Source: Phyllobates terribilis
Lineage: Eukaryota
NCBI RefSeq assembly: GCF_046119375.1
Contig: NW_027362764.1
Location: 496,992,001 to 497,056,000, forward strand
Reading direction: 5' to 3'
DNA length: 64,000 nt
The notes under the pieces are model-generated. The model was not told the origin of the DNA. It saw nothing but the letters and a program-made list of their open reading frames with translations, and ran no database searches. Of this stretch, positions 5,501 through 63,433 are shown piece after piece. Both the position numbers and the translations under genes were made by a program. Each line of letters opens with the position of its first letter. Within the stretch, counting starts at the first letter, position 1.

Positions 5501-8122
5501 TACATAAAGTGCAGCACAGATTCATCTCATTGCCTCACTACTGAGTATGTACATAAAGTGCAGCACAGATTCATCTCATTGCCTCACTACTAAGAGTGTA
5601 CATAAAGTGCAGCACAGATTCATCTCACTGCCTCACTACTGAGTATGTACATAAAGTGCAGCACAGATTCATCTCACTGCCTCACTATTGAGCATGTACA
5701 TAAAGTGGAGCATAGATTCATCTCACTGCCTCACTACTGAGCATGTACATAAAGTGCAGCACAGATTCATCTCACTGCCTCACTACTGAGCATGTACATA
5801 AAGTGCTTCATCTCACTGCCTCACTACTAAGCGTGTACATAAAGTGCAGCACAGATTCATCTCACTGCCTCACTACTGAGAATGTACATAAAGTGCAGCA
5901 CAGATTCATCTCACTGCCTCACTACTGAGCATGTACATAAATGCAGCACAGATTCATCTCACTGCCTCACTACTGAGCATGTACATAAAGTGCAGCACAG
6001 ATTCATCTCACTGCCTCACTACTGAGCATGTACATAAAGTGCAGCACAGATTCATCTCACTGCCTTACTACTGAGCATGTACATAAAGTGCAGCACAGAT
6101 TCATCTCACTGCCTCACTACTAAGCGTGTACATAAAGAGCAGCACAGATTCATCTCACTGCCTCACTACTGAGCGTGTACATAAAGTGCAGCAGATTCAT
6201 CTCACTGCCTCACTACTGAGCATGTACATAAAGTGCAGCACAGATTCATCTCACTGCCTCACTACTGAGCATGTACATAAAGTGGAGCATAGATTCATCT
6301 CACTGCCTCACTACTGAGCATGTACATAAAGTGCAGCACAGATTCATCTCACTGCCTCACTACTAAGCGTGTACATAAAGTGCTTCATCTCACTGCCTCA
6401 CTACTAAGCGTGTACATAAAGTGCAGCACAGATTCATCTCACTGCCTCACTACTGAGAATGTACATAAAGTGCAGTACAGATTCATCTCACTGCCTCACT
6501 ACTGAGCATGTACATAAAGTGCAGCACAGATTCATCTCACTGCCTCACTACTGAGCGTGTACATAAAGTGCAGCACAGATTCATCTCACTACTGAGCATG
6601 TACATAAAGTGTAGCACAGATTCATCTCACTGCCTCACTACTGAGCATGTACATAAAGTGCAGCACAGATTCATCTCACTGGCTCACTACTGAGCATGTA
6701 CATAAAGTGCAGCACAGATTCATCTCACTGCCTCACTACTGAGCATGTACATAAAGTGCAGCACAGATTCATCTCACTGCCTCACTACTGAGCATGTACA
6801 TAAAGTGCAGCACAGATTCATCTCACTGCCTCACTACTGAGAATGAACATAAAGTGCAGCACAGATTCATCTCACTGCCTCACTACTGAGCATGTACATA
6901 AAGTGGAGCACAGATTCATCTCACTGCCTCACAACTGAGCATGTACATAAAGTGGATCACAGATTCATCTCACTGCCTCACTACTGAGCGTGTACATAAA
7001 GTGCAGTACAGATTCATCTCATTGCCTCACTACTGAGTATGTACATAAAGTGCAGCACAGATTCATCTCACTGCCTCACTACTGAGCGTGTACATAAAGT
7101 GCAGCACAGATTCATCTCAATGCCTCACTACTAAGCATGTACATAAAGTGCAACACAGATTCATCTCACTGCCTCACTACTGAGTATGTACATAAAGTGC
7201 AGCACAGATTCATCTCACTGCCTCACTACTGAGCATGTACATAAAGTGGAGCATAGATTCATCTCACTGCCTCACTACTGAGCATGTACATAAAGTGCAG
7301 CACAGATTCATCTCACTGCCTCACTACTAAGCGTGTACATAAAGTGCTTCATCTCACTGCCTCACTACTAAGAGTGTACATAAAGTGCAGCACAGATTCA
7401 TCTCATTGCCTCACTACTGAGAATGTACATAAAGTGCAGCACAGATTCATCTCACTGCCTCACTACTGAGCATGTACATAAAGTGCAGCACAGATTCATC
7501 TCACTGCCTTACTACTGAGCATGTACATAAAGTGCAGCACAGATTCATCTCACTGCCTCACTACTAAGCGTGTGCATAAAGAGCAGCACAGATTCATCTC
7601 ACTGCCTCACTACTGAGCGTGTACATAAAGTGCAGCACAGATTCATCTCACTGCTTCACTACTGAGCATTTACATAAAGTGCAGCACAGATTCATCTCAC
7701 TGCCTCACTATTGAGCATGTACATAAAGTGCAGCACAGATTCATCTCACTGCCTCACTACTGAGCATGTACATAAAGTGCAGCACAGATTCATCTCACTG
7801 CCTCACTACTGAGCATGTACATAAAGTGCAGCACAGATTCATCTCACTGCCTCACTACTGAGCATGTACATAAAGTGCAGCACAGATTCATCTCACTGCC
7901 TCACTACTGAGCATGTACATAAAGTGCAGCACAGATTCATCTCACTGCCTCACTACTGAGCATGTACATAAAGTGGAGCACAGATTCATCTCACTGCCTC
8001 ACTACTGAGCATGTACATAAAGTGCAGCACAGATTCATCTCACTGCCTCACTACTGAGCATGTACATAAAGTGCAGCACAGATTTATCTCACTGCCTCAT
8101 TACTGCCGACTCCACAGCCCTG
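2541..8122. mobile_element. hAT-type MITE inflated by an internal 49-bp satellite
   Basis: TIRs CAGGGCTGCTGAGTCGG (2541) and CCGACTCCACAGCCCTG (8106-8122). Perfect 8-bp TSD TATTAGAG at 2533-2540 and 8123-8130. Confidence 0.9.
2640..8105. repeat. 49-bp minisatellite, about 110 copies
   Basis: Unit ACTGAGCATGTACATAAAGTGCAGCACAGATTCATCTCACTGCCTCACT; period read directly (e.g. 7741 to 7790). Confidence 0.97.
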
Positions 8123-15937: not shown

Positions 15938-17245
15938 CACTCAAACATACAGAGGACCAAAATGAAAAACTTGGACAAAGTAGTCGGCCAACCAGTAAAC
16001 AGTATAATGGCCCCACATAGTCCTCCATACAGAATAATGGGCCCCACATAGTCCTCCATACAGAATAATAGGCCCCACATAGTCCTCCATACAGAATAAT
16101 GGGCCCCAGAAAGTCCTCCATACAGAATAATGGGCCCCAAATAGTCCTACATACAGAATAATGGTCCCCAGAGAGTCCTCCATACAGAATAATGGGCCCC
16201 ACATTGTCCTACATACAGAATAATGGGTCCCATAGTCCTCCATACAGAATAATGGGCCCCACATAGTCCTCCATACAGAATAATGGGCCCCACATAGTCC
16301 TCCATACAGAATAATGGGCCCCACATAGTCCTCCATACAGAATAATGGGCCCCACATAGTCCTACATACAGAATAATGGGTCCCATAGTCCTCCATACAG
16401 AATAATGGGCCCCACATAGTCCTCCATACAGAATAATGGGCCCCACATAGTCCTCCATACAGAATAATGGGCCCCACATAGTCCTCCATACAGAATAATG
16501 GGCCCCAGAAAGTCCTTCATACAGAATAATGGGCCCCACATAGTCCTACATACAGAATAATGGGCCCCACATAGTCCTCCATACAGAATAATGGGCCCCA
16601 CATAGTCCTCCATACAGAATAATGGGCCCCAGAAAGTCCTTCATACAGAATAATGGGCCCCACATAGTCCTACATACAGAATAATGGGTCCCACATAGTC
16701 CTCCATACAGTATAATGGGCCCCACATAGTCCTCCATACAGAATAATGAGCCCCACATAGTGTTCCATACAGCATAATGGGCCCCACATAGTCCTCCATA
16801 CAGAATAATGGGCCCCACATAGTCCTCCATACAGAATAATGGGCCCCACATAGTCCTCCATTACAGAATAATGGCCCCACATAGACCTCCATACAGAATA
16901 ATGGGCCCCACATAGTCCTCCATACAGAATAATGGGCCCCACATAGTCCTCCATACAGAATAATGGGCCCCACATAGTCCTCCATACAGAATAATGGGCC
17001 CCACATAGTCCTCCATACAGAATAATGGCCCCACATAGTCCTCCATACAGAATAATGGGCCCCACATAGTCCTCCATACAGAATAATAGGCCCCACATAG
17101 TCCTCCATACAGAATAATGAGCCCCACATAGTCCTCCATACAGAATAATGGGCCCCACATAGGGTTTGCAGTTCTGGTGTCGAGGGCCAAATAAAACCAC
17201 CCTACAGGCCAGATTTAGCCCACGGGCCAGAGTTTGCCGCATATG
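15938..17245. mobile_element. hAT/Charlie-like non-autonomous element carrying a 31-bp minisatellite
   Basis: Right end GGCCAGATTTAGCCCACGGGCCAGAGTTTGCCGCATATG resembles Charlie-type ends. Flanks CCATAAAC (15930-15937) and CCATAAAT (17246-17253) match 7/8. The left TIR looks partly deleted. Confidence 0.55.
15999..17160. repeat. 31-bp minisatellite, about 37 copies
   Basis: Unit CCCCACATAGTCCTCCATACAGAATAATGGG; period 31 (16261 to 16292). Confidence 0.96.
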
Positions 17246-18145: not shown

Positions 18146-19507
18146 AGGGCTCCTAGGGACCTCACTGCAGCCCATACATGAAAGGGTATGGCCAGTATGG
18201 AGGGGCTGTCAGGGGACCCCACTGTAGCCCATATATGTAAGGGCATGGCCAATATGGGGGGGCTGTCAGGGGACCTCACTGCAACCAATACATGTAAGGG
18301 TATGACCAGTATAGAGGGGCTCCCAGGGACCTCACTGCAACCAATACATGTAAGGGTATGACCAGTATAGAGGGGCTTCCAGGGACCTCACTGCAACCAA
18401 TACATGTAAGGGCATGGCCAGTATGGAGGGGCTCCCAGGGAACCCCACTGCAGCCCATACATGTAAGGGTATGGCCAGTATGGAGGGGCTCCCAGGGTAT
18501 CTCACTGCAGCCCATACATGTAAAGGCATGGCCAGTATGGAGGGGCTCCCAGGGGACCCCACTGCAACCAATACATGTAAGGGCATGGCCAGTATGGAGG
18601 GGCTCCCAGGGGACCTCACTGCAACCCACACATGTAAGGACATGGCCAGTAGGGAGGGGCTCACAGGAGACCTCACTGCAACCAATACATGTAAGGGCAT
18701 GGCCAGTATGGAGGGGACCCCACTGCAACCAATACATGTAAGGGCATGGCCAGTATGGAGGAGCTCCCAGAGGACCTCACTGCAACCCACACATGTAAGG
18801 GCATGGCCAGTATGGAGGGGCTCCCAGGGGACCCCACTGCAACCAATACATGTAAGGGCATGGCCAGTATGGAGGAGCTCCCAGGGGACCTCACTGCAAC
18901 CCACACATGTAAGGGCATGGCCAGTATGGAGGGGCTCCCATGAGACCTCACTGCAACCAATACATGTAAGGGCATGGCCAGTATGGAGGGGCTCACAGGG
19001 GACCTCACTGCAGCCCATACATGTAAGGATATGGCCAGTATGGAGGGGCTCCCAGGGACCTCGCTGGAGCCCATACATGTAAGGGCATGGCCAGTATGGA
19101 GGGGCTCCCAGGGACCTCACTGCAGCCCATACATGAAAGGGTATGGCCAGTATGGAGGGGCTGTCAGGGGACCCCACTGCAGCCCATATATGTAAGAGCA
19201 TGGCCAATATGGAGGGGCTGTCAGGGGACCTCACTGCAACCAATACATGTAAGGGTATGGCCAGTATGGAGGGGCTCCCAGGGAACCCCACTGCAGCCCA
19301 TACATGTAAGGGTATGGCCAGTATGGAAGGGCTCCCAGGGACCTCACTGCAGCCCATACATGTAAGGGCATAGCCAGTATGGAAGGGCTCCCAGGGATCT
19401 CACTGCAGCCCATACATGTAAGGATATGGCCAGTATGGAGGGGCTCCCATGGGACCTCACTGCAGCCCCTACATGTAAAGGCATGGCCAGTATGGAGGGG
19501 CTCCCAT
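18146..19507. repeat. 56-57-bp minisatellite, about 24 copies, abutting the GFOD1 5' region
   Basis: Unit CCAGTATGGAGGGGCTCCCAGGGGACCTCACTGCAACCAATACATGTAAGGGCATGG (18807 to 18864). No TIR or TSD seen. Confidence 0.95.
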
Positions 19508-20147: not shown

Positions 20148-23100
20148 CTAGTTATTGAACCATTTCTAACCCCGGGTGAAGAGCATTTTTATTGGTGTAT
20201 GATCCCCCATCCTGATATATGCTTCCCCATCCTGATATATGCTCCCCAATCCTGGTCCCCCATCCTGGTATATGCTCCCCCATCCTGGTATATGATCCCC
20301 TATCCTGGTATATGCTCTCCCATCCTGGTATATGCTCCCAAATCCTGGTCCCTCGTCCTGATATATGCTCTTCCATCCTGGTATATGCTCTCCCATCCTG
20401 GTCCCCTATCCTGGTATATGTGCCCCAATCCTGGTCCCCCATCCGGGCATATGCTCCCCCATCCTGGTATCTGCTCCCCCATCCTGGTATATGCTCCCCC
20501 ATCCTGGTCCCCTATCCTGGTATATGCTCCCCCATCCTGGTATATGCTCCCCCATCTTTGTCCCCTATCCTGGTATATGCTCTCCCATCCTGGTATATGC
20601 TCCCCCATCCTGGTCCTCCATCCTGGTATATGCTACCCCATCCTGGTATATGCTACCAAATCCTGGTCCCACATACTGGTATATGCTCCCCCATCCTGGT
20701 CCCCTATCCTGGTATATGCTCCCCCATCCTGGTCCTCCATCCTGGTATATGCTCCCCCATCCTGGCATATGCTCCCCCATCCTGGTATATGCTCCCCCAT
20801 CCTGGTATATGCTCCCCAATGCTGGTACCCTATCCTAGTATATGTTTTCCATCCTGGTCCCCTGTCCTGGCATATGCTCCCCCATCCTGGCATATGCTCT
20901 CCCATTCTGGTATATGCTCCCCCATCCTGGTTTATGCTCCCCCATCTTGGTCTCCTATCCTGGTATACGCTTCCCAATCCTGGTTCCCCATCCTGGTATA
21001 TGCTTCTCCATCCTGGTATATGCTCCCCCATCCTAGTCCCTTATCCTGTTATGTGCTCCCCCATCCTGGTATATGCTTCCCCATCCTGTTATATGCTCCC
21101 CCATCCTGGTATATGCTGCCCCATCTTGGTATATGCTCTCCCATCCTGGTATTTTCACCCCCATCCTGGTATATGCTCCCCCATCCTGATCCCCTATCCT
21201 GGTATATGCTCCCCCATCCTGGTATATGATCCCTCATCCTGGTATATGCCCCCCCCATTCTGGTCCCTTATCCTGGTATATGCTCCTCCATCCTGGTATG
21301 TGCTCTCCCATGCTGGTATATGCTCCCCAATCCTAGTCCCCCATCCAGGTATATGCTCCCCCATCCTGGTATATGCTCCCCCATCCTGGTATATGCTCCT
21401 CAATCCTGGTATATGCTACCCAATCCTGGTCCCCTATCCTGGTATGTGCTCCCCCATCCTGGTATATGCTCCCCCATCCTGTTGTGCTCCCCCATCCTGG
21501 TATATGCTCCCCCATCCTTTTCCCTTATCCTGTTATGTGCTCCCCCATCCTGGTATATGCTCCCCCATCCTATTCCCTTATCCTGTTATGTGCTCCCCCA
21601 TCCTGGTATATGCTCCCCCATCCTGGTCCCCTATCCTGGTATATGCTCCCCCCTCTTGGTATATGCTCCCTCATCCTGGTATATGCTCCCTCAACCGGGT
21701 ATATTCTCCCCAATCCTGGTCCTCCATCCTAGTATATGCTCCCCCATCCTATTATATGCTCCCCCATCCTGGTATATGCTCCCATATCCTGGTCCCCTAT
21801 CCTGGTATATACTCCCCAATCCTGGTCCCCTATACTGGTATATGCTCCCCCATCCTGGTCCCCTATCCTGGTATATGCTCCCCTATCCTGGTCCCCCATC
21901 CTGGTATATGCTCCCCCATCCTGATCCCCTATCCTGGTATATGCTCCCCAATCCTGCCCCCCCATCGTAATATTTGCTCCCCTATCCTGGTATCTGGTCC
22001 CCTCTCCTGGTATATGCTTCCCAATCCTGGTCCCCTATCCTGGTATATGCTCCCCCATCCTGGTATATGCTCCTCAATCCTGGTCCCCCATCCTGGTATA
22101 TGCTCCCCCATCCGGGTATCTGGTCCCCTATCATGGTATATGCTCCCCAATCCTGGTATATTCTCCCCCATCCTGGTATATGCTCCCCTATCCTGGTCCC
22201 CCATCATGGTATATGCTACCCCATTGTGGTCCCCAAATCCTGTTATGTGCTCCCCTATCCTGGTATAAGTTCCCCCATCTTGGTATTTGTGCCCCCATCC
22301 TGGTATATGCTCCCTCAACCGGGTATATGCTCCACAATCCTGGTCCCCCATCCTGGTACATGCTCGCCCATCCTATTGTATGGTCCCCCATCCTGGTATA
22401 TGCTCCCACATCCTGGTCCCCTATCATGGTATATACTCCCCAATCCTGGTCCCCTATACTGGTATATGCTCCCCCATCCTGGTCCCCTATCCTGGTATAT
22501 GCTCCCCAATCCTGGTCCCCCATCCTGGTATATGCTCCCCCCATCCTGGTCCCCTATCCTGGTATATGCTCCCCAATCCTGGTGCCCCCATCGGGGTATA
22601 TACTCCCCCATCCTGGTATCTCGTCCCCTCTCCTGGTATATGCTCCCCAAGCCTGGTCCCCCATCCTGGTATATGCTCCCCAATTCTGGTCCCCTATCCT
22701 GGTATATGCTCCTCAATCCTGGTCCCCCATCCTGGTATATGCTCCCCAAACCTGGTATCTGGTCCCCCATCCTGGTATATGCTCCCCCATCCTGGTATAT
22801 GCTCCCCTATCCTGGTCCCACAACATGGTATATGCTACCCCATTGTGGTCCCCTATCCTGTTATGTGCTCTCCTATCCTGGTATATGCTACCCCATCTTG
22901 GTATTTGTGCCCCCATACTGATATTTGTGCTCCCATCCTGGTTTATGCTCCCCCATCCTGGTGTATGCTTCCCCCCATCCTTGTATATGCTCCCCCATCA
23001 TGGTATTTGTGCCCCCATCCTGCTGTATGCTTCCCCATCCTGGTATATGCTCCCCCATGCTGGTATTTGTGTCCCCATCCTGCTATATGCTCCCCCCTCC

Positions 23101-23753
23101 TGTTATGTGCTCCCCCATCCTGGTATTTGCGCCCGCATCCTGGTCCCCCATCCTGTTATGTGCTCCCCCATCCTGGTATTTGCGCCTCCATCCTGGTATA
23201 TGCTCCCCCATCCTTCTCCCCCCACCTGGTATATGCTCCTCCATCCATCCATAAATTAAATAAAAAAAACACTCCTACTCAGCTTTCCATCCCTCCCCTG
23301 CAGTGCGTCGCAGGAATCAGCGCCTGCATTGTGCGATATCCGGCGCCATTTTATTGAAGACAAATTTGCAGAGTGTCTTAAACACAATGGTGCTGGAGTA
23401 TGCGCATACGCATTCTGCGATGTCCGGCGCCATTTTGCTGAAGACACACTGCAAATGTGTCTTCACTAAAATGGGGCCAGATATCACGCTATGCGCAGGC
23501 GTCGATTCCAACGTCACACTCCTCCCCCAGCCCGAACAGAGGCACGTCACACTCCTCCCCGGCAGGTATATGCTTATCTCGTCGGAGATCGCAATATGCA
23601 TTCAGTGCCTACACATACCGCGATATCCGGTGCCACACTCCTCATCCCTGTCTGGGATGTGGATGTGGTCTTCTGTCTGGGGCCAGACTGCACAGGCGCA
23701 TTGCAGTCTATAGAGGCTTTGACAGACGGAAACATCTCTGCCTATATTATAGA
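20148..23753 (-). mobile_element. Non-autonomous Helitron carrying a 3-kb minisatellite
   Basis: Minus strand reads A|TCTATAATATAGG (5' TC at 23753) ... AATAACTAG|T (3' CTAG at 20151-20148). Inserted between A and T with no TSD. The subterminal hairpin is degenerate. Confidence 0.7.
20199..23250. repeat. Compound 14/20-bp C-rich minisatellite
   Basis: Interleaved CCCCCATCCTGGTATATGCT and CCCCATCCTGGTCC units. Confidence 0.95.
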
Positions 23754-35248: not shown

Positions 35249-36817
35249 CAGCTCTGGCAAAAATTAAGAGACCACTGCACAGTTTTCTAAAAATCCCCAT
35301 CTCTACATGTCTGACAGCCATTCCATTCCAGTGTCAGTTGAATTCCAACCACAGTCCACCTCATTCTACTTAATGTGCTTCTGATTAGGTGATCACCTGA
35401 ACCAAATCTTATGTAACGAGGGAAAGTATAAAAAACACTGCTGTGGTCTTCACAATACTCTTGCAATAGGACAAGCTGGATGGCAAAACAAGTGCTAGGA
35501 ATAGCCTAAAGGTAATTTGAATGAAAAAATAACTTTTAACCATGCCAAAGGAGTTGAAAAGATAAGTCTTGAGTGAGGAAAATGGCTCAATTCTGGCTTT
35601 ACTAGCGGAGGGATACAGTGAGCGTCATGTTGCCTCAATTCTTAAAATTTCGAAGATGGCAGTCCATTACAAAAGGTCAAGCAGCAGACATTGGGGACAA
35701 CAAAGCTACTGACCGGGATGACTGTCATTTTATTCGAATGTCACTCAGCAACCGCAGGATGACATCAAGTGACCTACAAAAGGAATGGCAGCTGGGGTGA
35801 AGCGGAAAGAACAGTTCGTAACAGGCTCCTAGAGGCAGGCCTCAAGTCATGTAAAGCTAGAAAAAAGCCTTTCATCAATGAGAAGCGAAGGAGTGCCAGG
35901 CTGAAGTTTGCCAAAGACCATAAGGATTGGACCATAGAGGACTGGAGTAAGGTAATCTTCTCTGAGTCTAATTTTCAGCTTTGCCCAACACCTGGTCGTC
36001 TAATGGTTAGACGGAGACCTGGAGAAGCATACAAGCCACAGTGTCTTGCACCCACTGTGAAATTTGGTGGAGGATCGGTGATGATCTGGGGATGCTTCAG
36101 CAAGGTTGGAATTGGGCAGGTTAATTATTGCGAAGTACGTATGAATCAAGCTGCATACAAGGTTATCCTTGAAAAACCCTTGCTTCCTTCTGCTCAGGCA
36201 ATGTTCCCCAACTCTGAGGACTGTTTTTTCCAGCAGGACAATGCCCCATGCCACATAGCTAGATCAATCAATGTGTGGATGAAGGAGCACCACATCAAGA
36301 CCCTGTCATGGCCAGCCCAATCTCCAGACCTGAACCCCATTGAAAACCTCTGGAATGTAATCAAGAGGAAGATGGATAGTCATAAGTCATCAAACAAAGA
36401 AGAACTGCTTAAATTTTTGTGCCTGGAGTGGCATAAGGTCATCCAAAAGCAGTGTGAAAGACTGGTGGAAAGCATGCCAAGACGCATGAAAGCTGTGATT
36501 AAAAATCATGGTTATTCCACCAAATATTGATTTCTGAACTCTTCCTGAGTTAAAACATGAGTATTGTTTCTAAATGAATAAGAACTTGTTTTCTTTGCAT
36601 TAATTGAGGTCTGAAAGCACTTTCTTTTTTTATTATTTTGACGATTTCTCATTTGCTACAAATAAATACAAAAGTTTTAGCTTTGAATTTCGGAGACATG
36701 TTGTCAGTAGTTTATAGAATAAAACAATGTACATTTTACTCAAAAATATACCTATAAAGAGAAAAATCAAAGAAAGTGAAAATTTTGCAGTGGTCTCTTA
36801 AATTTTTGCCAGAGCTG
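35249..36817 (+). mobile_element. Full-length Tc1-like transposon in SIRT5 intron 3
   Basis: TA flanks; TIRs CAGCTCTGGCAAAAATTAAGAGACCACTGCA and its reverse complement. Confidence 0.93.
35542..36530 (+). pseudogene. Disrupted Tc1 transposase
   Basis: The ATG at 35542 is followed by an early stop and frameshifts. ORF 35769-36530 has FQQDNAPCH and SPDLNPIENLW, but IFSESNF lacks the first catalytic Asp. Confidence 0.88.
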
Positions 36818-52144: not shown

Positions 52145-52431
52145 TATGTATGAACATAGTCCATTCAGTTGGTCAGGGCCTCTATGGACTAGTCAGAAAA
52201 TGATCACCTTTTAACATCAATTATTCTGATTGGGGAACAATAATGAATAAATATACATTTATGAGCAAGCTTTCAGGATGTGTCAGTGTACATGATATCA
52301 AACCACTTGAATAGTTTTGCAGTTTGAATTTTCATTCAGTCAAGAATTAAATCACCAAATCTATATGATTTACTGTAGCTGCACAAGGAAGACAGCTCCG
52401 CAATGATGTTGGTGCTCTTGCATATTCTTTG

Positions 52432-54422
52432 CACTGCAGCGCTCCTCCCCTGCAGCAGAGTGCGCACCTTCATTGTGGTTTTCCGTACACAGCAGCGCTC
52501 CTCCCCTGCAGCAGAGGGCGAACCTTCATTGTGGTTTTCCGTACACTGCAGCGCTCCTCCGGTGCAGCAGAGGGCGCTCCTGCATTGTGGTTTTCCGTAC
52601 ACTGCAGCGCTCCTCCCCTGCAGCAGAGTGCGCACCTTCATTGTGGTTTTCCGTACACAGCAGCGCTCCTCCCCTGCAGCAGAGGGCGCACCTTCATTGT
52701 GGTTTTCCGTACACTGCAGCGTTCCTCCCGTGCAGCAGAGGGCGCACCTTCATTGTGGTTTTCCGTACACTGCAGCATTCCTCCCGTGCAGCAGAGGGCG
52801 CTCCTGCATTGTGGTTTTCCGTACACTGCAGCGTTCCTCCCGTGCAGCAGAGGGCGCACCTTCATTGTGGTTTTCCGTACACTGCAGCGTTCCTCCCGTG
52901 CAGCAGAGGGCGCACCTTCATTGTGGTTTTCCGTACACAGCAGCGCTCCTCCCCTGCAGCAGAGGGCGCTCCTGCATTGTGGTTTTCCGTACACTGCAGC
53001 GCTTCTACCCTGCAGCAGAGGGCGCTCCTGCATTGTGGTTTTCCGTACACTGCAGCGCTTCTACCCTGCAGCAGAGGGCGCTCCTGCATTGTGGTTTTCC
53101 GTACACTGCAGCGTTCCTCCAGTGCAGCAGAGGGCGCACCTGCATTGTGGTTTTCCGTACACTGCAGCGTTCCTCCAGTGCAGCAGAGGGCGCTCCTGCA
53201 TTGTGGTTTTCCGTACACTGCAGCGCTCCTCCCCTGCAGCAGAGGGCGCACCTTCATTGTGGTTTTCCGTACACAGCAGCGTTCTTCCAGTGCAGCAGAG
53301 GGCGCTCCTGCATTGTGGTTTTCCGTACACTGCAGCGTTCCTCCAGTGCAGCAGAGGGCGCTCCTGCATTGTGGTTTTCCGTACACTGCAGCGTTCCTCC
53401 GGTGCAGCAGAGGGCGCTCCTGCATTGTGGTTTTCCGTACACTGCAGCGTTCCTCCGGTGCAGCAGAGGGCGCTCCTGCATTGTGGTTTTCCGTACATTG
53501 CAGCGGTCCTCCCAGCAGCAGAGGGCGCACCTGCATTGTAACTGTCCTTACACAGCAGCGTTCCTCCACTGCAGCAGAGGGCGCTCCTGCATTGTGGTTT
53601 TCCGTACACTGCAGCGTTCCTCCAGTGCAGCAGAGGGCGCTCCTGCATTGTAGTTTTCCGTACACTGCAGCGTTCCTCCAGTGCAGCAGAGGGCGCTCCT
53701 GCATTGTGGTTTTCCGTACACTGCAGCGTTCCTCCAGTGCAGCAGAGGGCGCTCCTGCATTGTGGTTTTCCGTACACTGCAGCGTTCCTCCGGTGCAGCA
53801 GAGGGCGCTCCTGCATTGTGGTTTTCCGTACACTGCAGCGTTCCTCCAGTGCAACAGAGGACGCTCCTGCATTGTAGTTTTCCGTACACTGCAGCGTTCC
53901 TCCGGTGCAGCAGAGGGCGCTCCTGCATTGTGGTTTTCCGTACATTGCAGCGGTCCTCCCTGCAGCAGAGGGCGCACCTGCATTGTAACTGTCCTTACAC
54001 AGCAGCGTTCCTCCAGTGCAGCAGGGGGCGCACCTGCATTGTGGGTTTCCGTACACTGCAGCGTTCCTCCAGTGCAGCAGAGGGCGCTCCTGCATTGTGG
54101 TTTTCCGTACACTGCAGCGGTCCTCCCTGCAGCAGAGGGCGCTCCTGCATTGTAACTTTCCGTACACTGCAGCGGTCCTCCCTGCAGCAGAGGGCGCTCC
54201 TGCATTGTAACTTTCCGTACACTGCAGCGGTCCTCCCTGCAGCAGAGGGCGCTCCTGCATTGTGGTTTTCCGTACACTGCAGCGCTCCTCCCCTGCAGCA
54301 GAGGGCGCTGCTGCATTGTAACTTTCCGTACACTGCAGCACTCCTCACATGTAGCAGAGGGCGCTCCTGCAGTGTAGCGTTAGAAGACTTGCAGCGCTCC
54401 TCCCGTGCAGCAGAGGGCGCTC
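52432..54422 (+). repeat. 56-bp minisatellite, about 35 copies, with a CTCF-like motif in nearly every unit
   Basis: Unit GCAGCAGAGGGCGCTCCTGCATTGTGGTTTTCCGTACACTGCAGCGTTCCTCCAGT; period 56 (53404 to 53460). Confidence 0.96.
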
Positions 54423-54511
54423 TACGTTCACTATCACGTCGATCACACTGGTGCAGGTTGTTGGTTTCTGGTCTTCCTCTTCCGGTGGTCAGCTGACGTT
54501 TGCGGAGAAGC
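54423..54511 (+). promoter_or_regulatory. NOL7: Minimal unique NOL7 core promoter / 5' UTR
   Basis: ETS/GABP-like CTTCCGG (54479-54485) and CRE-like TGACGT (54494-54499) within the roughly 90 bp between the array and the ATG. Confidence 0.55.
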
Positions 54512-54630
54512 ATGACTCCTGAGCACGAACTGGAGAGTGAGGAGGATGAAGCGCCGGAGGAGGTGACCTTCCACAGCGCTAAGAGCCGGGCGGAGGAGAG
54601 TGCGCGGGTCAGACGGGAGGCGGCCAGCAG
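54512..54630 (+). CDS. NOL7: NOL7 (nucleolar protein 7) first coding exon (119 nt); later exons lie beyond the window
   Basis: MTPEHELESEEDEAPEEVTFHSAKSRAEESARVRREAASR matches the remembered NOL7 motif DEAPEELTF. Donor AG|GTAAGA at 54631. Synteny downstream of SIRT5. Confidence 0.85.
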
Positions 54631-54769
54631 GTAAGAGGGCACATATCACCGAGCTTTCCGGTGGTTGCAGACGCGTGTATTTTCTAGTGATCGGCTGACC
54701 AACGGGTCGTATGCTCTAGGTAAGTGTGATGTGTGGTCCCTCAGCAGCACTCATCTATGTAACATGTCA

Positions 54770-57700
54770 TCCTGAGTGACCGGCAGGGGGAGCCGCGTGT
54801 GTAATGTATCACATCCCGAGAGTAACCGGCAGGGGGAGCCACGTGTGTAATGTATCACATCCCGAGAGTGACCGGCAGGGGGAGCCACGTGTGTAATGTA
54901 TCACATCCCGAGAGTGACTGGCAGGGGGAGCTGCGTGTGTAATGTATCACATCCCGAGAGTGACCGGCAGGGGGCGCTACGTGTGTAATGTATCACATCC
55001 CGAGAGTAACCGGCAGGGGGAGCCACGTGTGTAATGTATCACATCCCGAGAGTGACCGGCAGGGGGAGCCACGTGTGTAATGTATCACATCCTGAGAGTG
55101 ACCGGCAGGGGGCGCTACGTGTGTAATGTATCACATCCCGAGAGTGACTGGCAGGGGGCGCTGCGTGTGTAATGTATCACATCCCGAGAGCGACCGGCAG
55201 GGGGAGCTGCGTGTGTAATGTATCACATCCCGAGAGTGACCAGCAGGGGGAGCTGCGTGTGTAATGTATCACATCCTGAGAGTGACCGGCAGGGGGAGCT
55301 GCGTGTGTAATGTATCACATCCTGAGAGTGACCGGCAGGGGGAGCTGCGTGTGTAATGTATCACATCCCGAGAGTGACCGGCAGGGGGAGCTGTGTGTGT
55401 AATGTATCACATCCCGAGAGTGACCGGCAGGGGGAGCCGCGTGTGTAATGTATCACATCCCGAGAGTGACCGGCAGGGGGCGCTACGTGTGTAATGTATC
55501 ACATCCCGAGAGTAACCGGCAGGGGGAGCCACGTGTGTAATGTATCACATCCCGAGAGTGACCGGCAGGGGGCGCTGCGTGTGTAATGTATCACATCCCG
55601 AGAGTGACCGGCAGGGGGAGCCGCGTGTGTAATGTATCACATCCCGAGAGTGACCGGCAGGGGGAGCTGCGTGTGTAATGTATCGCATCCTGAGAGTGAC
55701 CGGCAGGGGGCGCTGCGTGTGTAATGTATCGCATCCCGAGAGTGACCGGCAGGGGGCGCTGCGTGTGTAATGTATCGCATCCTGAGAGTGACCGGCAGGG
55801 GGCGCTGCGTGTGTAATGTATCGCATCCCGAGAGTGACCGGCAGGGGGAGCCGCGTGTGTAATGTATCGCATCCCGAGAGTGACCGGCAGGGGGAGCCGC
55901 GTGTGTAATGTATCGCATCCCGAGAGTGACCGGCAGGGGGAGCCACGTGTGTAATGTATCACATCCCGAGAGTGACTGGCAGGGGGAGCCGCGTGTGTAA
56001 TGTATCACATCCCGAGAGTGACCGGCAGGGGGCGCTGCGTGTGTAATGTATCACATCCCGAGAGTGACCGGCAGGGGGAGCCGCGTGTGTAATGTATCAC
56101 ATCCCGAGAGTGACCGGCAGGGGGAGCTGTGTGTGTAATGTATCACATCCCGAGAGTGACCGGCAGGGGGAGCCGCGTGTGTAATGTATCACATCCCGAG
56201 AGTGACCGGCAGGGGGAGCCGCGTGTGTAATGTATCGCATCCTGAGAGTGACCGGCAGGGGGAGCTGCGTGTGTAATGTATCGCATCCTGAGAGTGACCG
56301 GCAGGGGGCGCTGCGTGTGTAATGTATCGCATCCCGAGAGTGACCGGCAGGGGGAGCTGCGTGTGTAATGTATCACATCCCGAGAGTGACCGGCAGGGGG
56401 AGCCGCGTGTGTAATGTATCACATCCCGAGAGTGACCGGCAGGGGGAGCCGCGTGTGTAATGTATCACATCCCGAGAGTGACCGGCAGGGGGAGCCGCGT
56501 GTGTAATGTATCACATCCCGAGAGTGACCGGCAGGGGGAGCCGCGTGTGTAATGTATCACATCCCGAGAGTGACCGGCAGGGGGAGCCGCGTGTGTAATG
56601 TATCACATCCCGAGAGTGACCGGCAGGGGGCGCTGCGTGTGTAATGTATCACATCCCGAGAGTGACCGGCAGGGGGAGCCGCGTGTGTAATGTATCACAT
56701 CCCGAGAGTGACCGGCAGGGGGAGCTGTGTGTGTAATGTATCACATCCCGAGAGTGACCGGCAGGGGGAGCCACGTGTGTAATGTATCACATCCCGAGAG
56801 TGACCGGCAGGGGGAGCCGCGTGTGTAATGTATCACATCCCGAGAGTGACTGGCAGGGGGAGCTGCGTGTGTAATGTATCACATCCCGAGAGTGACCGGC
56901 AGGGGGCGCTGCGTGTGTAATGTATCACATCCCGAGAGTGACCGGCAGGGGGAGCCGCGTGTGTAATGTATCACATCCCGAGAGTGACCAGCAGGGGGAG
57001 CTGTGTGTGTAATGTATCACATCCCGAGAGTGACCGGCAGGGGGAGCTGCGTGTGTAATGTATCACATCCCGAGAGTGACCAGCAGGGGGAGCTGCGTGT
57101 GTAATGTATCACATCCCGAGAGTGACCAGCAGGGGGAGCTGTGTGTGTAATGTATCACATCCCGAGAGTGACCAGCAGGGGGAGCCGCGTGTGTAATGTA
57201 TCACATCCCGAGAGTGACTGGCAGGGGGCGCTGTGTGTGTAATGTATTTCATCCTCAGGGAGAGCTGTGTGTGTAATGTATCACATCCCGAGAGTGACCG
57301 GCAGGGGGAGCTGTGTGTGTAATGTATCACATCCCGAGAGTGACCGGCAGGGGGAGCTGTGTGTGTAATGTATCACATCCCGAGAGTGACCGGCAGGGGG
57401 AGCTGTGTGTGTAATGTATCACATCCCGAGAGTGACCGGCAGGGGGAGCTGTGTGTGTAATGTATCACATCCCGAGAGTGACCGGCAGGGGGAGCCACGT
57501 GTGTAATGTATCACATCCTGAGAGTGACCAGCAGGGGGAGCTGTGTGTGTAATGTATCACATCCCGAGAGTGACCGGCAGGGGGAGCTGCGTGTGTAATG
57601 TATCACATCCCGAGAGTGACCAGCAGGGGGAGCTGTGTGTGTAATGTATCACATCCCGAGAGTGACCAGCAGGGGGAGCCGCGTGTGTAATGTATCACAT

Positions 57701-60700
57701 CCCGAGAGTGACTGGCAGGGGGCGCTGTGTGTGTAATGTATTTCATCCTCAGGGAGAGCTGTGTGTGTAATGTATCACATCCCGAGAGTGACCGGCAGGG
57801 GGAGCTGTGTGTGTAATGTATCACATCCCGAGAGTGACCGGCAGGGGGAGCTGCGTGTGTAATGTATCACATCCCGAGAGTGACCGGCAGGGGGAGCTGC
57901 GTGTGTAATGTATCACATCCCGAGAGTGACCAGCAGGGGGAGCTGTGTGTGTAATGTATCACATCCCGAGAGTGACCAGCAGGGGGAGCCGCGTGTGTAA
58001 TGTATCACATCCCGAGAGTGACTGGCAGGGGGCGCTGTGTGTGTAATGTATTTCATCCTCAGGGAGAGCTGTGTGTGTAATGTATCACATCCCGAGAGTG
58101 ACCGGCAGGGGGAGCTGTGTGTGTAATGTATCACATCCCGAGAGTGACCGGCAGGGGGAGCCGCGTGTGTAATGTATCACATCCCGAGAGTGACCGGCAG
58201 GGGGAGCCACGTGTGTAATGTATCACATCCTGAGAGTGACCGGCAGGGGGCGCTACGTGTGTAATGTATCACATCCCGAGAGTGACTGGCAGGGGGCGCT
58301 GCGTGTGTAATGTATCACATCCCGAGAGCGACCGGCAGGGGGAGCTGCGTGTGTAATGTATCACATCCCGAGAGTGACCAGCAGGGGGAGCTGCGTGTGT
58401 AATGTATCACATCCTGAGAGTGACCGGCAGGGGGAGCTGCGTGTGTAATGTATCACATCCTGAGAGTGACCGGCAGGGGGAGCTGCGTGTGTAATGTATC
58501 ACATCCCGAGAGTGACCGGCAGGGGGCGCTGCGTGTGTAATGTATCACATCCCGAGAGTGACCAGCAGGGGGAGCCACGTGTGTAATGTATCACATCCCG
58601 AGAGTGACCGGCAGGGGGAGCCACGTGTGTAATGTATCACATCCTGAGAGTGACCGGCAGGGGGAGCTGCGTGTGTAATGTATCACATCCCGAGAGTGAC
58701 CGGCAGGGGGAGCCACGTGTGTAATGTATCACATCCTGAGAGTGACCGGCAGGGGGCGCTACGTGTGTAATGTATCACATCCCGAGAGTGACTGGCAGGG
58801 GGCGCTGCGTGTGTAATGTATCACATCCCGAGAGCGACCGGCAGGGGGAGCTGCGTGTGTAATGTATCACATCCCGAGAGTGACCAGCAGGGGGAGCTGC
58901 GTGTGTAATGTATCACATCCTGAGAGTGACCGGCAGGGGGAGCTGCGTGTGTAATGTATCACATCCTGAGAGTGACCGGCAGGGGGAGCTGCGTGTGTAA
59001 TGTATCACATCCCGAGAGTGACCGGCAGGGGGCGCTGCGTGTGTAATGTATCACATCCCGAGAGTGACCAGCAGGGGGAGCTGTGTGTGTAATGTATCAC
59101 ATCCCGAGAGTGACCGGCAGGGGGAGCTGCGTGTGTAATGTATCACATCCCGAGAGTGACCAGCAGGGGGAGCTGTGTGTGTAATGTATCACATCCCGAG
59201 AGTGACCAGCAGGGGGAGCCGCGTGTGTAATGTATCACATCCCGAGAGTGACTGGCAGGGGGCGCTGTGTGTGTAATGTATTTCATCCTCAGGGAGAGCT
59301 GTGTGTGTAATGTATCACATCCCGAGAGTGACCGGCAGGGGGAGCTGTGTGTGTAATGTATCACATCCCGAGAGTGACCGGCAGGGGGAGCTGCGTGTGT
59401 AATGTATCACATCCCGAGAGTGACTGGCAGGGGGCGCTGTGTGTGTAATGTATTTCATCCTCAGGGAGAGCTGTGTGTGTAATGTATCACATCCCGAGAG
59501 TGACCGGCAGGGGGAGCTGCGTGTGTAATGTATCACATCCTGAGAGTGACCGGCAGGGGGAGCTGCGTGTGTAATGTATCACATCCCGAGAGTGACCGGC
59601 AGGGGGCGCTGCGTGTGTAATGTATCACATCCCGAGAGTGACCAGCAGGGGGAGCTGTGTGTGTAATGTATCACATCCCGAGAGTGACCGGCAGGGGGAG
59701 CTGCGTGTGTAATGTATCACATCCCGAGAGTGACCAGCAGGGGGAGCTGTGTGTGTAATGTATCACATCCCGAGAGTGACCAGCAGGGGGAGCCGCGTGT
59801 GTAATGTATCACATCCCGAGAGTGACTGGCAGGGGGCGCTGTGTGTGTAATGTATTTCATCCTCAGGGAGAGCTGTGTGTGTAATGTATCACATCCCGAG
59901 AGTGACCGGCAGGGGGAGCTGCGTGTGTAATGTATCACATCCCGAGAGTGACCAGCAGGGGGAGCTGTGTGTGTAATGTATCACATCCCGAGAGTGACCA
60001 GCAGGGGGAGCCGCGTGTGTAATGTATCACATCCCGAGAGTGACTGGCAGGGGGCGCTGTGTGTGTAATGTATTTCATCCTCAGGGAGAGCTGTGTGTGT
60101 AATGTATCACATCCTGAGAGTGACCGGCAGGGGGAGCTGCGTGTGTAATGTATCACATCCCGAGAGTGACCGGCAGGGGGCGCTGCGTGTGTAATGTATC
60201 ACATCCCGAGAGTGACCAGCAGGGGGAGCTGTGTGTGTAATGTATCACATCCCGAGAGTGACCGGCAGGGGGAGCTGCGTGTGTAATGTATCACATCCTG
60301 AGAGTGACCGGCAGGGGGAGCTGCGTGTGTAATGTATCACATCCTGAGAGTGACCGGCAGGGGGAGCTGCGTGTGTAATGTATCACATCCCGAGAGTGAC
60401 CGGCAGGGGGCGCTGCGTGTGTAATGTATCACATCCCGAGAGTGACCAGCAGGGGGAGCTGTGTGTGTAATGTATCACATCCCGAGAGTGACCGGCAGGG
60501 GGAGCTGCGTGTGTAATGTATCACATCCCGAGAGTGACCAGCAGGGGGAGCTGTGTGTGTAATGTATCACATCCCGAGAGTGACCAGCAGGGGGAGCCGC
60601 GTGTGTAATGTATCACATCCCGAGAGTGACTGGCAGGGGGCGCTGTGTGTGTAATGTATTTCATCCTCAGGGAGAGCTGTGTGTGTAATGTATCACATCC

Positions 60701-60803
60701 CGAGAGTGACCGGCAGGGGGAGCTGTGTGTGTAATGTATCACATCCCAAGAGTGACCAGCAGGGGGCGCTTTGTGTGTAATGTATTTCATCCTCAGGGGG
60801 AGC
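54770..60803 (+). repeat. 46-bp minisatellite, about 130 copies, in NOL7 intron 1, with a CTCF-like core per unit
   Basis: Unit GTGACC(G/A)GCAGGGGG(A/C)GC(C/T)GCGTGTGTAATGTATCACATCCCGAGA; period 46 (56161 to 56207); occasional 34-bp variant units. Confidence 0.97.
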
Positions 60804-60877: not shown

Positions 60878-61657
60878 GCTGCAGAAACGCTTAAAAAACG
60901 CATGGTAGAAGGCCTGCCATGTTCCCCAATGATAATCCGCATGTGCTGTGTACATGCTGCGGAAATTTCCGCTGCAGGTTATCATTGCGGGAAAAAAACG
61001 CAGCACTACCAATTATTTTGCGGGAGCGCTGCGTTTTCGCCGCCATTGACTTGCATTGGAACGCATGGATTCCGCAAGACTGCCTCTGTACATGCGGAAT
61101 CCAAGCGTTTCAATGTGCGGATGGTACCCGGGTGTGGAGGAGAGGAGACTCTCCTCTGGACCAGGGTACCATAGAACCTGTAAAAAAAAAAAAATGGCCC
61201 CCGCTGCGCTTGTATTTCCTTGCCGGCAGCTCACGGACTGAAGGACCTTCGCTGACGTCATAGTCATGTGACGGCAGGTCCTTCAGTGTAGTCTACCGCG
61301 ATCTGCCGGCAAGGAAGGACGGAGCGAAGCAAGACTGCGGGGGCCATCGGAAGGTAAGTATATATTTATTTTTTACCATTCTTTCGGTCACAGTATATAA
61401 ATCCATGCCGGTTGCATGGATTTATATCGTGTGACCAAGTTGACAAGCACTTTCCAAGTGATGCTAAAATCGCTTGGAAAGCGCTTGTCAACCTGCATGA
61501 GGAAATGCAAGTGAAGAACGCTTCACATCCGCATGTCCCTGGCAGGAAAACGCATGTACAATCCGCATGTACAATCCGCATGCGTTTTTTCTGCCAGGGA
61601 GATGCAGAAACGCTCAGGAAAAAATCCGGAGCATTTCTACATCGTGGGCACATAGCC
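60878..61657. mobile_element. Harbinger-like MITE, inverted relative to 1418-2370, with a rearranged left end
   Basis: Right TIR CGTGGGCACATAGCC|TAA; highly similar to the reverse complement of 1418-2370. Confidence 0.8.
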
Positions 61658-61730
61658 TAAGAAACAGACTGTAGTAAGAGTTTATCTATCTGCAATGAAC
61701 TATTTTACAGACTGGCTCACCAGTACTTAA

Positions 61731-63433
61731 CCCCTTCATAACTGGGCTTTTTTTCATGTTTACACTCTTGTTTTTCCTGCCATTCTTCTAAGAGCTATAA
61801 CTTTATCTAGTCGTATGAGATCTTGTTTTTTTTGTGAGACGAGATGTAGTTGTGAATGACACCATTTATTTTATGATGTGACACCCTCTAACCAGTCCAG
61901 CAAAATCTGAACTCCAATATGGCGCTTCTTCCCTTCTGAGCTTTGCACTGTGCCTCAAAAGTCGTTTTTGACCACATGTGGGGTATCGGTGTGTTCAGGA
62001 GAAATTGCACAACAAATTTTGGGGGCCATTTTCTCCTGCTATCCTTGTGAAATGGAAATATTGCGGGTTAAGGCTATGTGCCCACGTAACAGATTTGATG
62101 CAGAGCGTTTTTGCCTCTCTGGCAGAAAAAAACGCATGCAGATTTACATGCGTTTTTTCTGCCAGGTAGAAGCGTTTTTTCAAGCACATTTCCAAGCGAT
62201 TTTGAGCATCACTTGGAAAAGTGCTTGACAAGTTGATCACACAATATAAATCCATGCAACCAGCATGGATTTATAATGTGTGAACAACTTAGATGCTTTA
62301 AATGCAGCATCTATAGTAAAAAAAAAAAAGAATTAAAACGTTAAAAATAAACAAAACCTGTTTATTCACCCCTCCGACGGCCCCCGGTCTGCTCTCCAGT
62401 CTCCTCCGGTCTGCTCCCGGCCGTGTCTTCTCTCTTCAGCGTCTCGCAGTGTACTGTCAGGACCTGCGGTGACGTCATGTAGTCAGCTGATGGTCACGCG
62501 ACCATCATCTGACTAAATGACGTCACCGCAGGTCCTGACAGTACACTGCGGGACGCTGAAGAGAGAAGACGCGGCCGGGAGCAGACCGGGGGCCGCCGGA
62601 GAGGTGAATATACAGGTTTTGTTTATTTTTAACTTTTTTATTTCTTTTTTTCACCGCATGGTAGCCGGGATGAAGAGGAGTTGTAGTCTCGTCTTCATCC
62701 CAGGTACCCCACACACCGCGATTACGCTGCAGCGTAATCGCGGTAGAAATGGTCATGCTGCGTTTTGCAAAGCAATGCGAATTCGTCGCGCAAATTAGCG
62801 CATCATGTGCACAGCACATCCGAATTCACATTAGTTTGCATGGCAGACGGTTTTACAAGCATTTTCGCGGCGGTAAAAACTCCACAAAAACCACTACGTG
62901 GGCACATAGCCTAAAACAACATTTTTGTGAAAAAAAAATATATTTTTTCATTTTCACAGATCAACGTAAAATTCTGTGAAGCACCTGTGGGTTCAAGGTG
63001 CTCACCACATGTGTAGATAAATTCCTCAAAGTCACTTCAAATGTGATGTAGTCCCTAAAGAAATGGTATTGTGAATTTTGTTGGAAAAATGAGAATTTTT
63101 TTTTTAACCCTTCTAACTTCCTAACAAAAAAATAGTTTAAAAAATGGTGCAGATGTAAAGTAGACATGTGGGAAATGTTATTTATTAACTATATTGTGTG
63201 ACACATCTCTCTGATTTAAGGGCTTAAGAATGAAAAGTTTGAAAAATGCAATATTTTCGCCAAACGTTTTGATATTTTCACAAATAAACGCAAGTCATAT
63301 TGAACAAATTTTTCTCCGAATCGCTGGGATATGTTGAAGCTTTCCAGAGTTATTACCACATAAAGTGACACTGGTCAGAATTGTAAAATTTGGCCCGGTC
63401 ATGAAGGTGAAAACAGGCTCGGGGGTGAAGTGG
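61731..63433. mobile_element. piggyBac-like non-autonomous element with a nested MITE
   Basis: TTAA|CCCCTTCAT ... GTGAAGTGG|TTAA. Confidence 0.6.
62072..62911. mobile_element. Harbinger-like MITE nested in the piggyBac-like element
   Basis: TAA|GGCTATGTGCCCACGTA ... TACGTGGGCACATAGCC|TAA (TAA TSD); central palindrome of about 290 bp. Confidence 0.85.

What the first reader, a model, noticed from the sequence alone, without database searches (positions are those of the whole stretch)
52432..54422. The 56-bp unit appears to hold an extended CTCF site (upstream module plus core), amplified from the NOL7 promoter
Seen: units read CTGCAGCGTT-CCTCCAGT-GCAGCAGAGGGCGCT, with CTGCAG starting 18 bp before the core. 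Established: CTCF zinc fingers 9-11 recognise an upstream TGCAG-type module a short fixed spacer from the core, which raises residence time. The spacing here matches my recollection of the short-spacer extended motif. The last copy (54391-54422) runs straight into the unique promoter and no TIR or TSD flanks the array, so the array probably grew from a native promoter CTCF site (inference).
Basis: partly seen in the sequence, partly recalled or inferred. Interest (0 to 1): 0.72.

Follow-up and report, generated by a model that had tools for sequence, protein, structure and literature searches.

The report
CTCF-motif minisatellite abutting frog NOL7 promoter
A 2-kb tandem repeat ending 90 bases before the start codon of a poison-frog NOL7 gene carries, in most of its 36 units, a strong same-direction match to the docking site of the genome-folding protein CTCF, so it is a plausible but untested repeat-built CTCF platform of a kind already known from mammals.

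Summary
A 56-bp x 36 array lies at 52432-54422 and ends 90 nt before the ATG of NOL7 exon 1. Of the 36 units, 31 carry a + strand CTCF core scoring at least 11 bits. CTGCAG starts exactly 18 bp before the core in 24 units. Published data show this is the commonest register of the two-part CTCF site (5-bp spacer).

The match has limits:
- Only the CTGCAG half of the 10-bp upstream motif fits (6-7 of 10 positions).
- Six units have lost it, and five have a spacer 1 bp shorter.

No TIR, TSD or other copy of the unit is seen in the window. Identical units and block duplications point to unequal crossing-over.

Nearly a third of the window is minisatellite. Only the two CpG-rich arrays flanking exon 1 carry CTCF cores.

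Two claims remain untested. CTCF binding could not be examined. Nor could the claim that the array grew from a native promoter site:
- no DNA could be fetched for other frogs' NOL7 loci.

The scan has already noted similar CTCF-motif minisatellites near promoters on other pieces of this genome, some said to belong to abundant transposon-derived satellites.

Verdict: real feature, first reading partly supported, new member of a known kind, moderate interest.

The parts
52432..54422 (+). 56-bp minisatellite with 36 units, each holding a forward CTCF-like core. GC 0.60, CpG observed/expected 0.64.
53106..53138 (+). Representative extended site: CTGCAG-type upstream half-module, 8-nt gap to the core, then the 15-bp core.
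   Evidence: register compared with published sites
54389..54421 (+). Last, promoter-proximal copy. It is truncated right after the core and ties for the best core score in the array (17.2 bits).
54331..54386 (+). Penultimate unit, strongly degenerate, with a weak core (6.8 bits).
54423..54511 (+). Unique 89-nt stretch between the array and the ATG, presumed core promoter and 5' UTR. The transcription start site was not determined.
   Evidence: no similarity to the unit
54512..54630 (+). NOL7 exon 1 coding part. The donor GT is at 54631.
54774..60803 (+). Context: 46-bp x 133 array in intron 1, unrelated in sequence to the 56-bp unit. 111 units carry a still stronger CTCF core on the same strand.

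Best explanation
This is a locally amplified, CpG-rich 56-bp minisatellite abutting the core promoter of NOL7 in a dendrobatid frog.

Shown:
- The array and its internal block duplications are real. The array therefore turns over by unequal crossing-over or slippage.
- 31 of 36 units hold a CTCF core on the + strand.
- 24-25 units also hold the CTGCAG half of the upstream (ZF9-11) module in the canonical 5-bp-spacer register.

Inferred:
- If the array is accessible, several CTCF molecules can dock side by side. The extended site spans about 34 bp of each 56-bp unit.
- All bound molecules would have their ZF3 / N-terminal side facing the NOL7 gene. The array would then act as a one-directional cohesin stop, loop anchor or boundary at the promoter.
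- The partial upstream module would add some stability.
- Core position 2 is CpA, not CpG, so core binding should be little affected by DNA methylation.
- Origin by in-place amplification of one native promoter-proximal site is plausible but unproven.
For: - Array and units.
- Core scores: 31 units at 11 bits or more and 26 at 14 bits or more (p about 6e-6 or better), all on the + strand.
- Chance of such a core in a shuffled unit: 2 in 5000.
- The other four arrays in the window have best scores of -7.8 to 2.1.
- Upstream-module census.
- Published register and example sites.
- The upstream motif raises affinity and insulation in mammals.
- The two-part motif is conserved from lamprey to human, and a mammalian CTCF motif marks Xenopus TAD borders.
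- CpG observed/expected is 0.64 in the array and 0.86 at exon 1, against 0.00-0.13 in the other four arrays.
- Identical units and duplication at lag 3 and lag 8.
- No TIR, TSD or extra copy in the window.
- Methylation rule for core positions 2 and 12.
- Closely spaced CTCF sites can be co-occupied.
Against: - There are no binding, accessibility, methylation or expression data for this locus.
- The first core position is G, the rarest base there in the matrix I used.
- The 3' half of the upstream motif does not match. 11 of 36 units lack the canonical register.
- The non-CTCF half of the unit is just as invariant as the core. Conservation therefore reflects homogenisation, not demonstrable selection on the site.
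- Minisatellites fill about 30% of this window, so an array next to a promoter is not unusual here.
- Genome-wide copy number of the unit is unknown.
Confidence: 0.5

Rival explanations
1. Neutral by-product. The array is an ordinary G+C-rich minisatellite, expanded by unequal crossing-over in a recombination-prone, promoter-adjacent and subtelomere-like region. The CTCF-like word rode along and is not occupied or has no effect.
For: About 30% of the window is minisatellite. Frog extended subtelomeres are packed with recombination-driven tandem repeats enriched in AGGG-type words. Frogs lack PRDM9, so crossovers are expected to favour promoters and CpG islands, as in other vertebrates where PRDM9 does not direct them. 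Variation among units shows no constraint specific to the core.
Against: Two unrelated arrays flanking the same exon both carry strong cores on the same strand. The chance is about 4e-4 for one and 2e-4 for the other, and the four other arrays have none. Both CTCF-bearing arrays keep their CpGs while the others do not.
Confidence: 0.3
2. The array is one local block of a dispersed satellite family, possibly derived from a transposon, that happens to carry a CTCF motif. It was not amplified from a native NOL7 site.
For: Earlier notes of this scan (unchecked by me) describe other CTCF-motif arrays in this genome as blocks of very abundant satellites, one copied from a transposon end. Bredeson et al. 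describe tandem arrays derived from transposons in frogs.
Against: There is no other copy of the unit in the remaining 56 kb, and no TIR or TSD. The abundant satellite in those notes is described as CpG-free and 57 bp, while this unit has four CpGs. The 57-bp array in this window is unrelated.
Confidence: 0.2
3. The array works through other factors than CTCF. It would be a repeat-built promoter or enhancer module, like the human TERRA 29-bp repeats that carry an NRF1 site in each unit. The invariant second half of the unit (TGCATTGTGGTTTTCCGTA) would be the bound part.
For: That half is as invariant as the core. It contains RUNX-like (TGTGGTT) and ETS-like (TTCCGT) words, by my own reading without a matrix test.
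Against: No matrix was scored for these factors. The words are short and common, and invariance is explained by homogenisation.
Confidence: 0.1

Closest known systems
Two-part vertebrate CTCF site (core bound by ZF3-7 plus upstream motif bound by ZF9-11), for example the IL3 +2.9 kb insulator site
   Same: A 15-bp core fitting the consensus at 14 of 15 positions. CTGCAG lies 18 bp before the core, the same register as both IL3 sites and the common 5-bp-spacer class.
   Different: The 3' four bases of the upstream 10-mer do not fit TTCC. The first core base is G rather than C. Binding is untested.
CTCF-bound tandem repeats of mammals (the DXZ4, ICCE and FIRRE macrosatellites, and VNTRs regulated by CTCF such as those of SLC6A4)
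   Same: Many same-direction CTCF motifs created by tandem amplification; lineage-specific (one search lists the papers).
   Different: The unit is 56 bp rather than kilobases. The array abuts a housekeeping promoter and is not on a sex chromosome. No occupancy data exist.
Clustered CTCF sites (2xCTSes) at mammalian promoters
   Same: Closely spaced CTCF motifs at a promoter that can be co-occupied.
   Different: Those clusters hold two or a few sites that are conserved between species. This one holds 36 sites made by recent repeat expansion.
Recombination-driven minisatellites of frog extended subtelomeres (Bredeson et al. 2024)
   Same: High local density of arrays, G+C-rich units and signs of unequal crossing-over.
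   Different: That work does not describe CTCF motifs in the units. The chromosomal position of this window is unknown.
Human TERRA promoter 61-29-37 bp repeats
   Same: CpG-island tandem repeats at a promoter, with a factor site in every unit and CTCF nearby.
   Different: There the repeated site is for NRF1, and the CTCF site lies outside the repeats.

Membership tests
Two-part (extended) CTCF binding site | 15-bp core fitting CCA(C/G)CAG(G/A)(G/T)GGC(G/A)(C/G)(C/T) | tested here: met
   14 of 15 positions fit in the consensus unit. The matrix consensus agrees with the published string.
Two-part (extended) CTCF binding site | Upstream 9-10-bp motif resembling CTGCAGTTCC | tested here: inconclusive
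   6-7 of 10 positions match. CTGCAG is perfect in 24 units, but the last four positions mismatch. The match is comparable to the conserved UPK2 site CTGCAGCCCA. No matrix for the upstream motif was available.
Two-part (extended) CTCF binding site | Spacer of 5 or 6 bp to the 19-bp core, so that CTGCAG starts 18 or 19 bp before CCA | tested here: met
   The distance is 18 bp in 24 of 36 units (25 counting the TTGCAG of the last copy) and 17 bp in 5 units. Literature register.
Two-part (extended) CTCF binding site | Occupancy by CTCF that depends on ZF9-11 | not testable with these tools
   No ChIP, footprint or EMSA data could be reached.
CTCF-bound tandem repeat (DXZ4 / FIRRE type) | CTCF motif in each repeat unit | tested here: met
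CTCF-bound tandem repeat (DXZ4 / FIRRE type) | Demonstrated CTCF binding and anchoring of long-range contacts | not testable with these tools
   No data were available.
Transposon-borne CTCF-site expansion (SINE B2 type) or dispersed satellite | The unit lies inside a mobile element (TIR, TSD or tail) with dispersed copies | tested here: not met
   No TIR or TSD between the flanks, and no second copy in the window. The genome-wide count could not be made, so this test covers only the 64 kb of the window.
Frog subtelomeric recombination-driven minisatellite | Tandem array of units longer than 10 bp in a repeat-dense, recombinogenic chromosome end | tested here: inconclusive
   The array and the dense neighbourhood are shown: six large arrays cover about 30% of the window, against 10.67% genome-wide in X. 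tropicalis. Chromosome position and recombination rate are unknown.
NOL7 (U3 snoRNA-associated protein, NUC129 domain) | Exon 1 peptide orthologous to NOL7 | tested here: met
   95% identity over 39 residues to a Ranitomeya imitator protein named NOL7 that carries PF08157 NUC129. The only PDB hits are yeast Bud21/Utp16 and human NOL7. A SIR2-domain gene lies upstream in R. imitator.

The most novel reading that the evidence does not exclude
In dendrobatid frogs, native promoter-proximal CTCF sites are repeatedly amplified in place into arrays of tens to hundreds of co-oriented, extended CTCF sites. The driver would be crossover activity at promoters in a genome without PRDM9. This would be a transposon-independent route to the birth of CTCF sites and would build unusually strong one-directional boundaries around housekeeping promoters. 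NOL7 exon 1 would be one case, bracketed by two unrelated arrays of this kind.
Probability: 0.15. Interest if true: 0.7.

Novelty: new member of a known kind. Interest (0 to 1): 0.4.

Why it matters
If CTCF really occupies these units, the locus would show a vertebrate creating dozens of strong, same-direction CTCF sites next to a promoter by repeat expansion alone. The natural unit variants (CTGCAG against CAGCAG, 18-bp against 17-bp register) would then serve as a ready-made test of the upstream-motif rules outside mammals. The scan has noted similar arrays elsewhere in this genome. Together they could bear on how frog genomes gain and lose chromatin boundaries. If CTCF does not bind, the array is one more minisatellite in a repeat-dense region.

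Tried and rejected
- **Sequencing runs.** Later work on the array was done in local scripts only.
- **Cross-species promoter comparison.** The exon-1 peptide found frog NOL7 proteins. No DNA could be fetched for Ranitomeya imitator, Hyperolius riggenbachi or Pseudophryne corroboree because their files are too large.
- **Other look-ups.** P0002, P0003, P0006 and the window's own 40-aa ORF are not on record. The word search with the 40-aa peptide found no candidate.
- **TGCAGC as an internal sub-repeat.** I tested whether the upstream TGCAGC is only an internal repeat of the unit. There is no significant internal periodicity, so I rejected the idea.
- **Decayed units in the flanks.** The alignments are not significant: 50 of 500 shuffles reach the left-flank score, and about 230 of 500 the right-flank score. 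Only a weak in-register trace appears at 52410-52431.
- **Relation to neighbouring arrays.** The 56-bp unit shares nothing with the 46-bp array, and only a 9-mer with the 57-bp array.
- **Other scans.** Pfam on exon 1 alone gave nothing. Rfam on the whole window gave nothing. No upstream neighbour gene was found among the ten longest of the 29 ORFs of 90 aa or more between 23 and 52 kb.

Full report
**1. The observation**

Tandem Repeats Finder reports one array at 52432-54422, with period 56, 35.6 copies and 92% matches. Anchoring on the conserved core gives 36 units spaced 56 bp (30 times) or 55 bp (5 times).

It has the 10-mer CTGCAGCGTT, an 8-nt linker and the core GCAGCAGAGGGCGCT.

The last copy is cut right after its core, at 54421/54422. 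It is followed by 89 nt of unique sequence and then the ATG at 54512.

**2. The gene**

The ORF from 54512 to the donor GT at 54631 encodes 39-40 residues.
- Against all PDB chains, its only hits are yeast Bud21/Utp16 and human NOL7. These are weak (E 0.3-0.5) but mutually consistent.
- A HMMER search of 1.84 billion representative proteins found three significant hits.
- The best hit is 95% identical and comes from Ranitomeya imitator. Its source names it NOL7, and it carries the NUC129 domain PF08157.
- In R. imitator a SIR2-domain gene lies upstream on the same strand.

So the gene is NOL7 and the genome is that of a dendrobatid frog. Earlier scan notes call it the golden poison frog. I did not verify the species.

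**3. The CTCF core**

The matrix consensus agrees with the composite consensus printed by Bowers and Cockerill.
- 31 of 36 units score 11 bits or more. 26 score 14 bits or more, a p-value of about 6e-6 or better. All are on the + strand.
- Against the published degenerate consensus, the unit fits 14 of 15 positions. The only miss is G instead of C at position 1.
- Only 2 of 5000 shuffles of the unit reach its score.

**4. The upstream module and its spacing**

The literature shows it is right.
- The composite consensus is CTGCAGTTCC, then five N, then TGG, then CCACCAG....
- Both IL3 insulator sites have their 10-mer followed by 8 nt and then CCA. CTGCAG therefore starts 18 bp before the core.
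- FOXJ3 has 19 bp and UPK2 has 16 bp.
- The 5-bp spacer is the commonest form and the 6-bp spacer comes next. The 5-bp form binds more strongly in vitro.

In this array CTGCAG starts at 18 bp in 24 units, and the last copy has TTGCAG there. It starts at 17 bp in five units, and six units read CAGCAG instead.

The limits are real.
- Only 6-7 of the 10 upstream positions match.
- The TTCC half sits 2 bp out of register.
- The 7th and 8th positions of the 9-mer (T and C), which the affinity study singles out, are G and T here.
- The match is about as good as the mammal-conserved UPK2 site CTGCAGCCCA.

TGCAGC occurs twice in the unit, so I tested for an internal sub-repeat. I found none.

**5. How the array grew**

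Several units are identical to one another. Mean differences dip at lags of 3 and 8 units, and one three-unit block recurs 447 bp away. This is the signature of unequal crossing-over.

The variable columns are mostly in the linker, at the degenerate last core position and in the second half of the unit. The non-CTCF half is as invariant as the core. The data therefore show homogenisation, not selection on the site.

The penultimate unit is badly decayed, while the last, promoter-side core has the joint best score in the array. That fits a preserved native site, but it is a single observation.

**6. Mobile-element test**

The 400-bp flanks share no inverted or direct repeat. The flanks do not resemble the unit significantly. 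No copy of the unit longer than 11 nt lies elsewhere in the window.

Within 64 kb, the array is therefore local.

**7. Context**

Six large minisatellites fill about 30% of the window. Only the two that flank NOL7 exon 1 carry CTCF cores:
- this 56-bp array;
- an unrelated 46-bp x 133 array in intron 1, with 111 units at 16 bits or more on the same strand.

Both keep their CpGs, with observed/expected of 0.64 and 0.75 (0.86 around exon 1). The other four arrays are at 0.00-0.13. High CpG content could mean a hypomethylated germline state or simply young age.

Frog chromosome ends are known to be dense in recombination-driven tandem repeats. Frogs also lack PRDM9, and where PRDM9 does not direct crossovers in other vertebrates, recombination is raised at promoters and CpG islands. 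That gives a neutral route to arrays next to promoters.

**8. Likely working**

These points are inferred, not shown.
- The two-part motif is conserved from lamprey to human. A mammalian CTCF motif marks Xenopus domain borders. Frog CTCF should therefore recognise these units.
- An extended site covers about 34 of the 56 bp, so neighbouring units could be filled together, as at mammalian clustered sites.
- All motifs point the same way, with the ZF3 / N-terminal side toward the gene. That is the side that stops cohesin.
- Core position 2 is followed by A. The only core CpG is at position 12, where methylation barely matters.

**9. What could not be done**

I have no read depth, no RNA evidence and no cross-species k-mer evidence.

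DNA of other frogs' NOL7 loci could not be fetched. The origin claim and the dispersed-satellite rival both stay open.

Earlier scan notes report similar arrays near promoters elsewhere in this genome, some as blocks of abundant satellites. These are unchecked leads. The library search found no paper on CTCF-motif tandem repeats in frogs.

**10. Verdict**

- The extended-site reading is partly supported.
- The origin claim is untested.
- The feature is a new member of a known kind, the tandem repeat that carries CTCF motifs.
- Interest is moderate.

Noticed in passing
window 54774-60803: A 46-bp x 133 array in NOL7 intron 1 is unrelated to the 56-bp unit. 111 of its units carry a stronger CTCF core (16 bits or more) on the same strand. 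CpG observed/expected is 0.75 and GC skew about +0.25. Exon 1 is thus bracketed by two co-oriented CTCF-motif arrays.
   Followed up: partly
window 2632-8105, 15999-17162, 18147-19506, 20193-23246: Four further large minisatellites (49 bp x 113, 31 bp x 38, 57 bp x 24, 20 bp x 168). All are CpG-poor (observed/expected 0.00-0.13) and none has a CTCF-like core.
   Followed up: partly
window 26045, 47262 (+ strand) and 50561 (- strand): Three isolated strong CTCF-like matches (18.8, 17.6 and 15.3 bits) lie outside any array.
   Followed up: no
window 35769-36530: A remnant of a Tc1/mariner transposase (Pfam DDE_3 and HTH_Tnp_Tc3_2).
   Followed up: partly
window 61386-62283 and 62322-62651: Long, near-perfect inverted repeats (arms up to 104 nt) lie just after the 46-bp array. 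They look like palindromic MITE-type elements. The region has a high CpG observed/expected (0.82) despite low G+C.
   Followed up: no
window 52410-52431: The left edge of the array shows a weak in-register trace of a decayed partial unit (11 of 13 matches to unit positions 30-42, then TTCTTTG where the unit has TTCCGTA). It is not significant on its own.
   Followed up: partly
protein P0001 (Ranitomeya imitator, GCA_958301615.1): The public NOL7 gene model of R. imitator fuses a retroelement protease-like N-terminus and a stretch with no counterpart in other NOL7 proteins to the true NOL7 exons. It looks like an annotation artefact. The upstream gene has a SIR2 domain, as expected for SIRT5-NOL7 synteny.
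   Followed up: no
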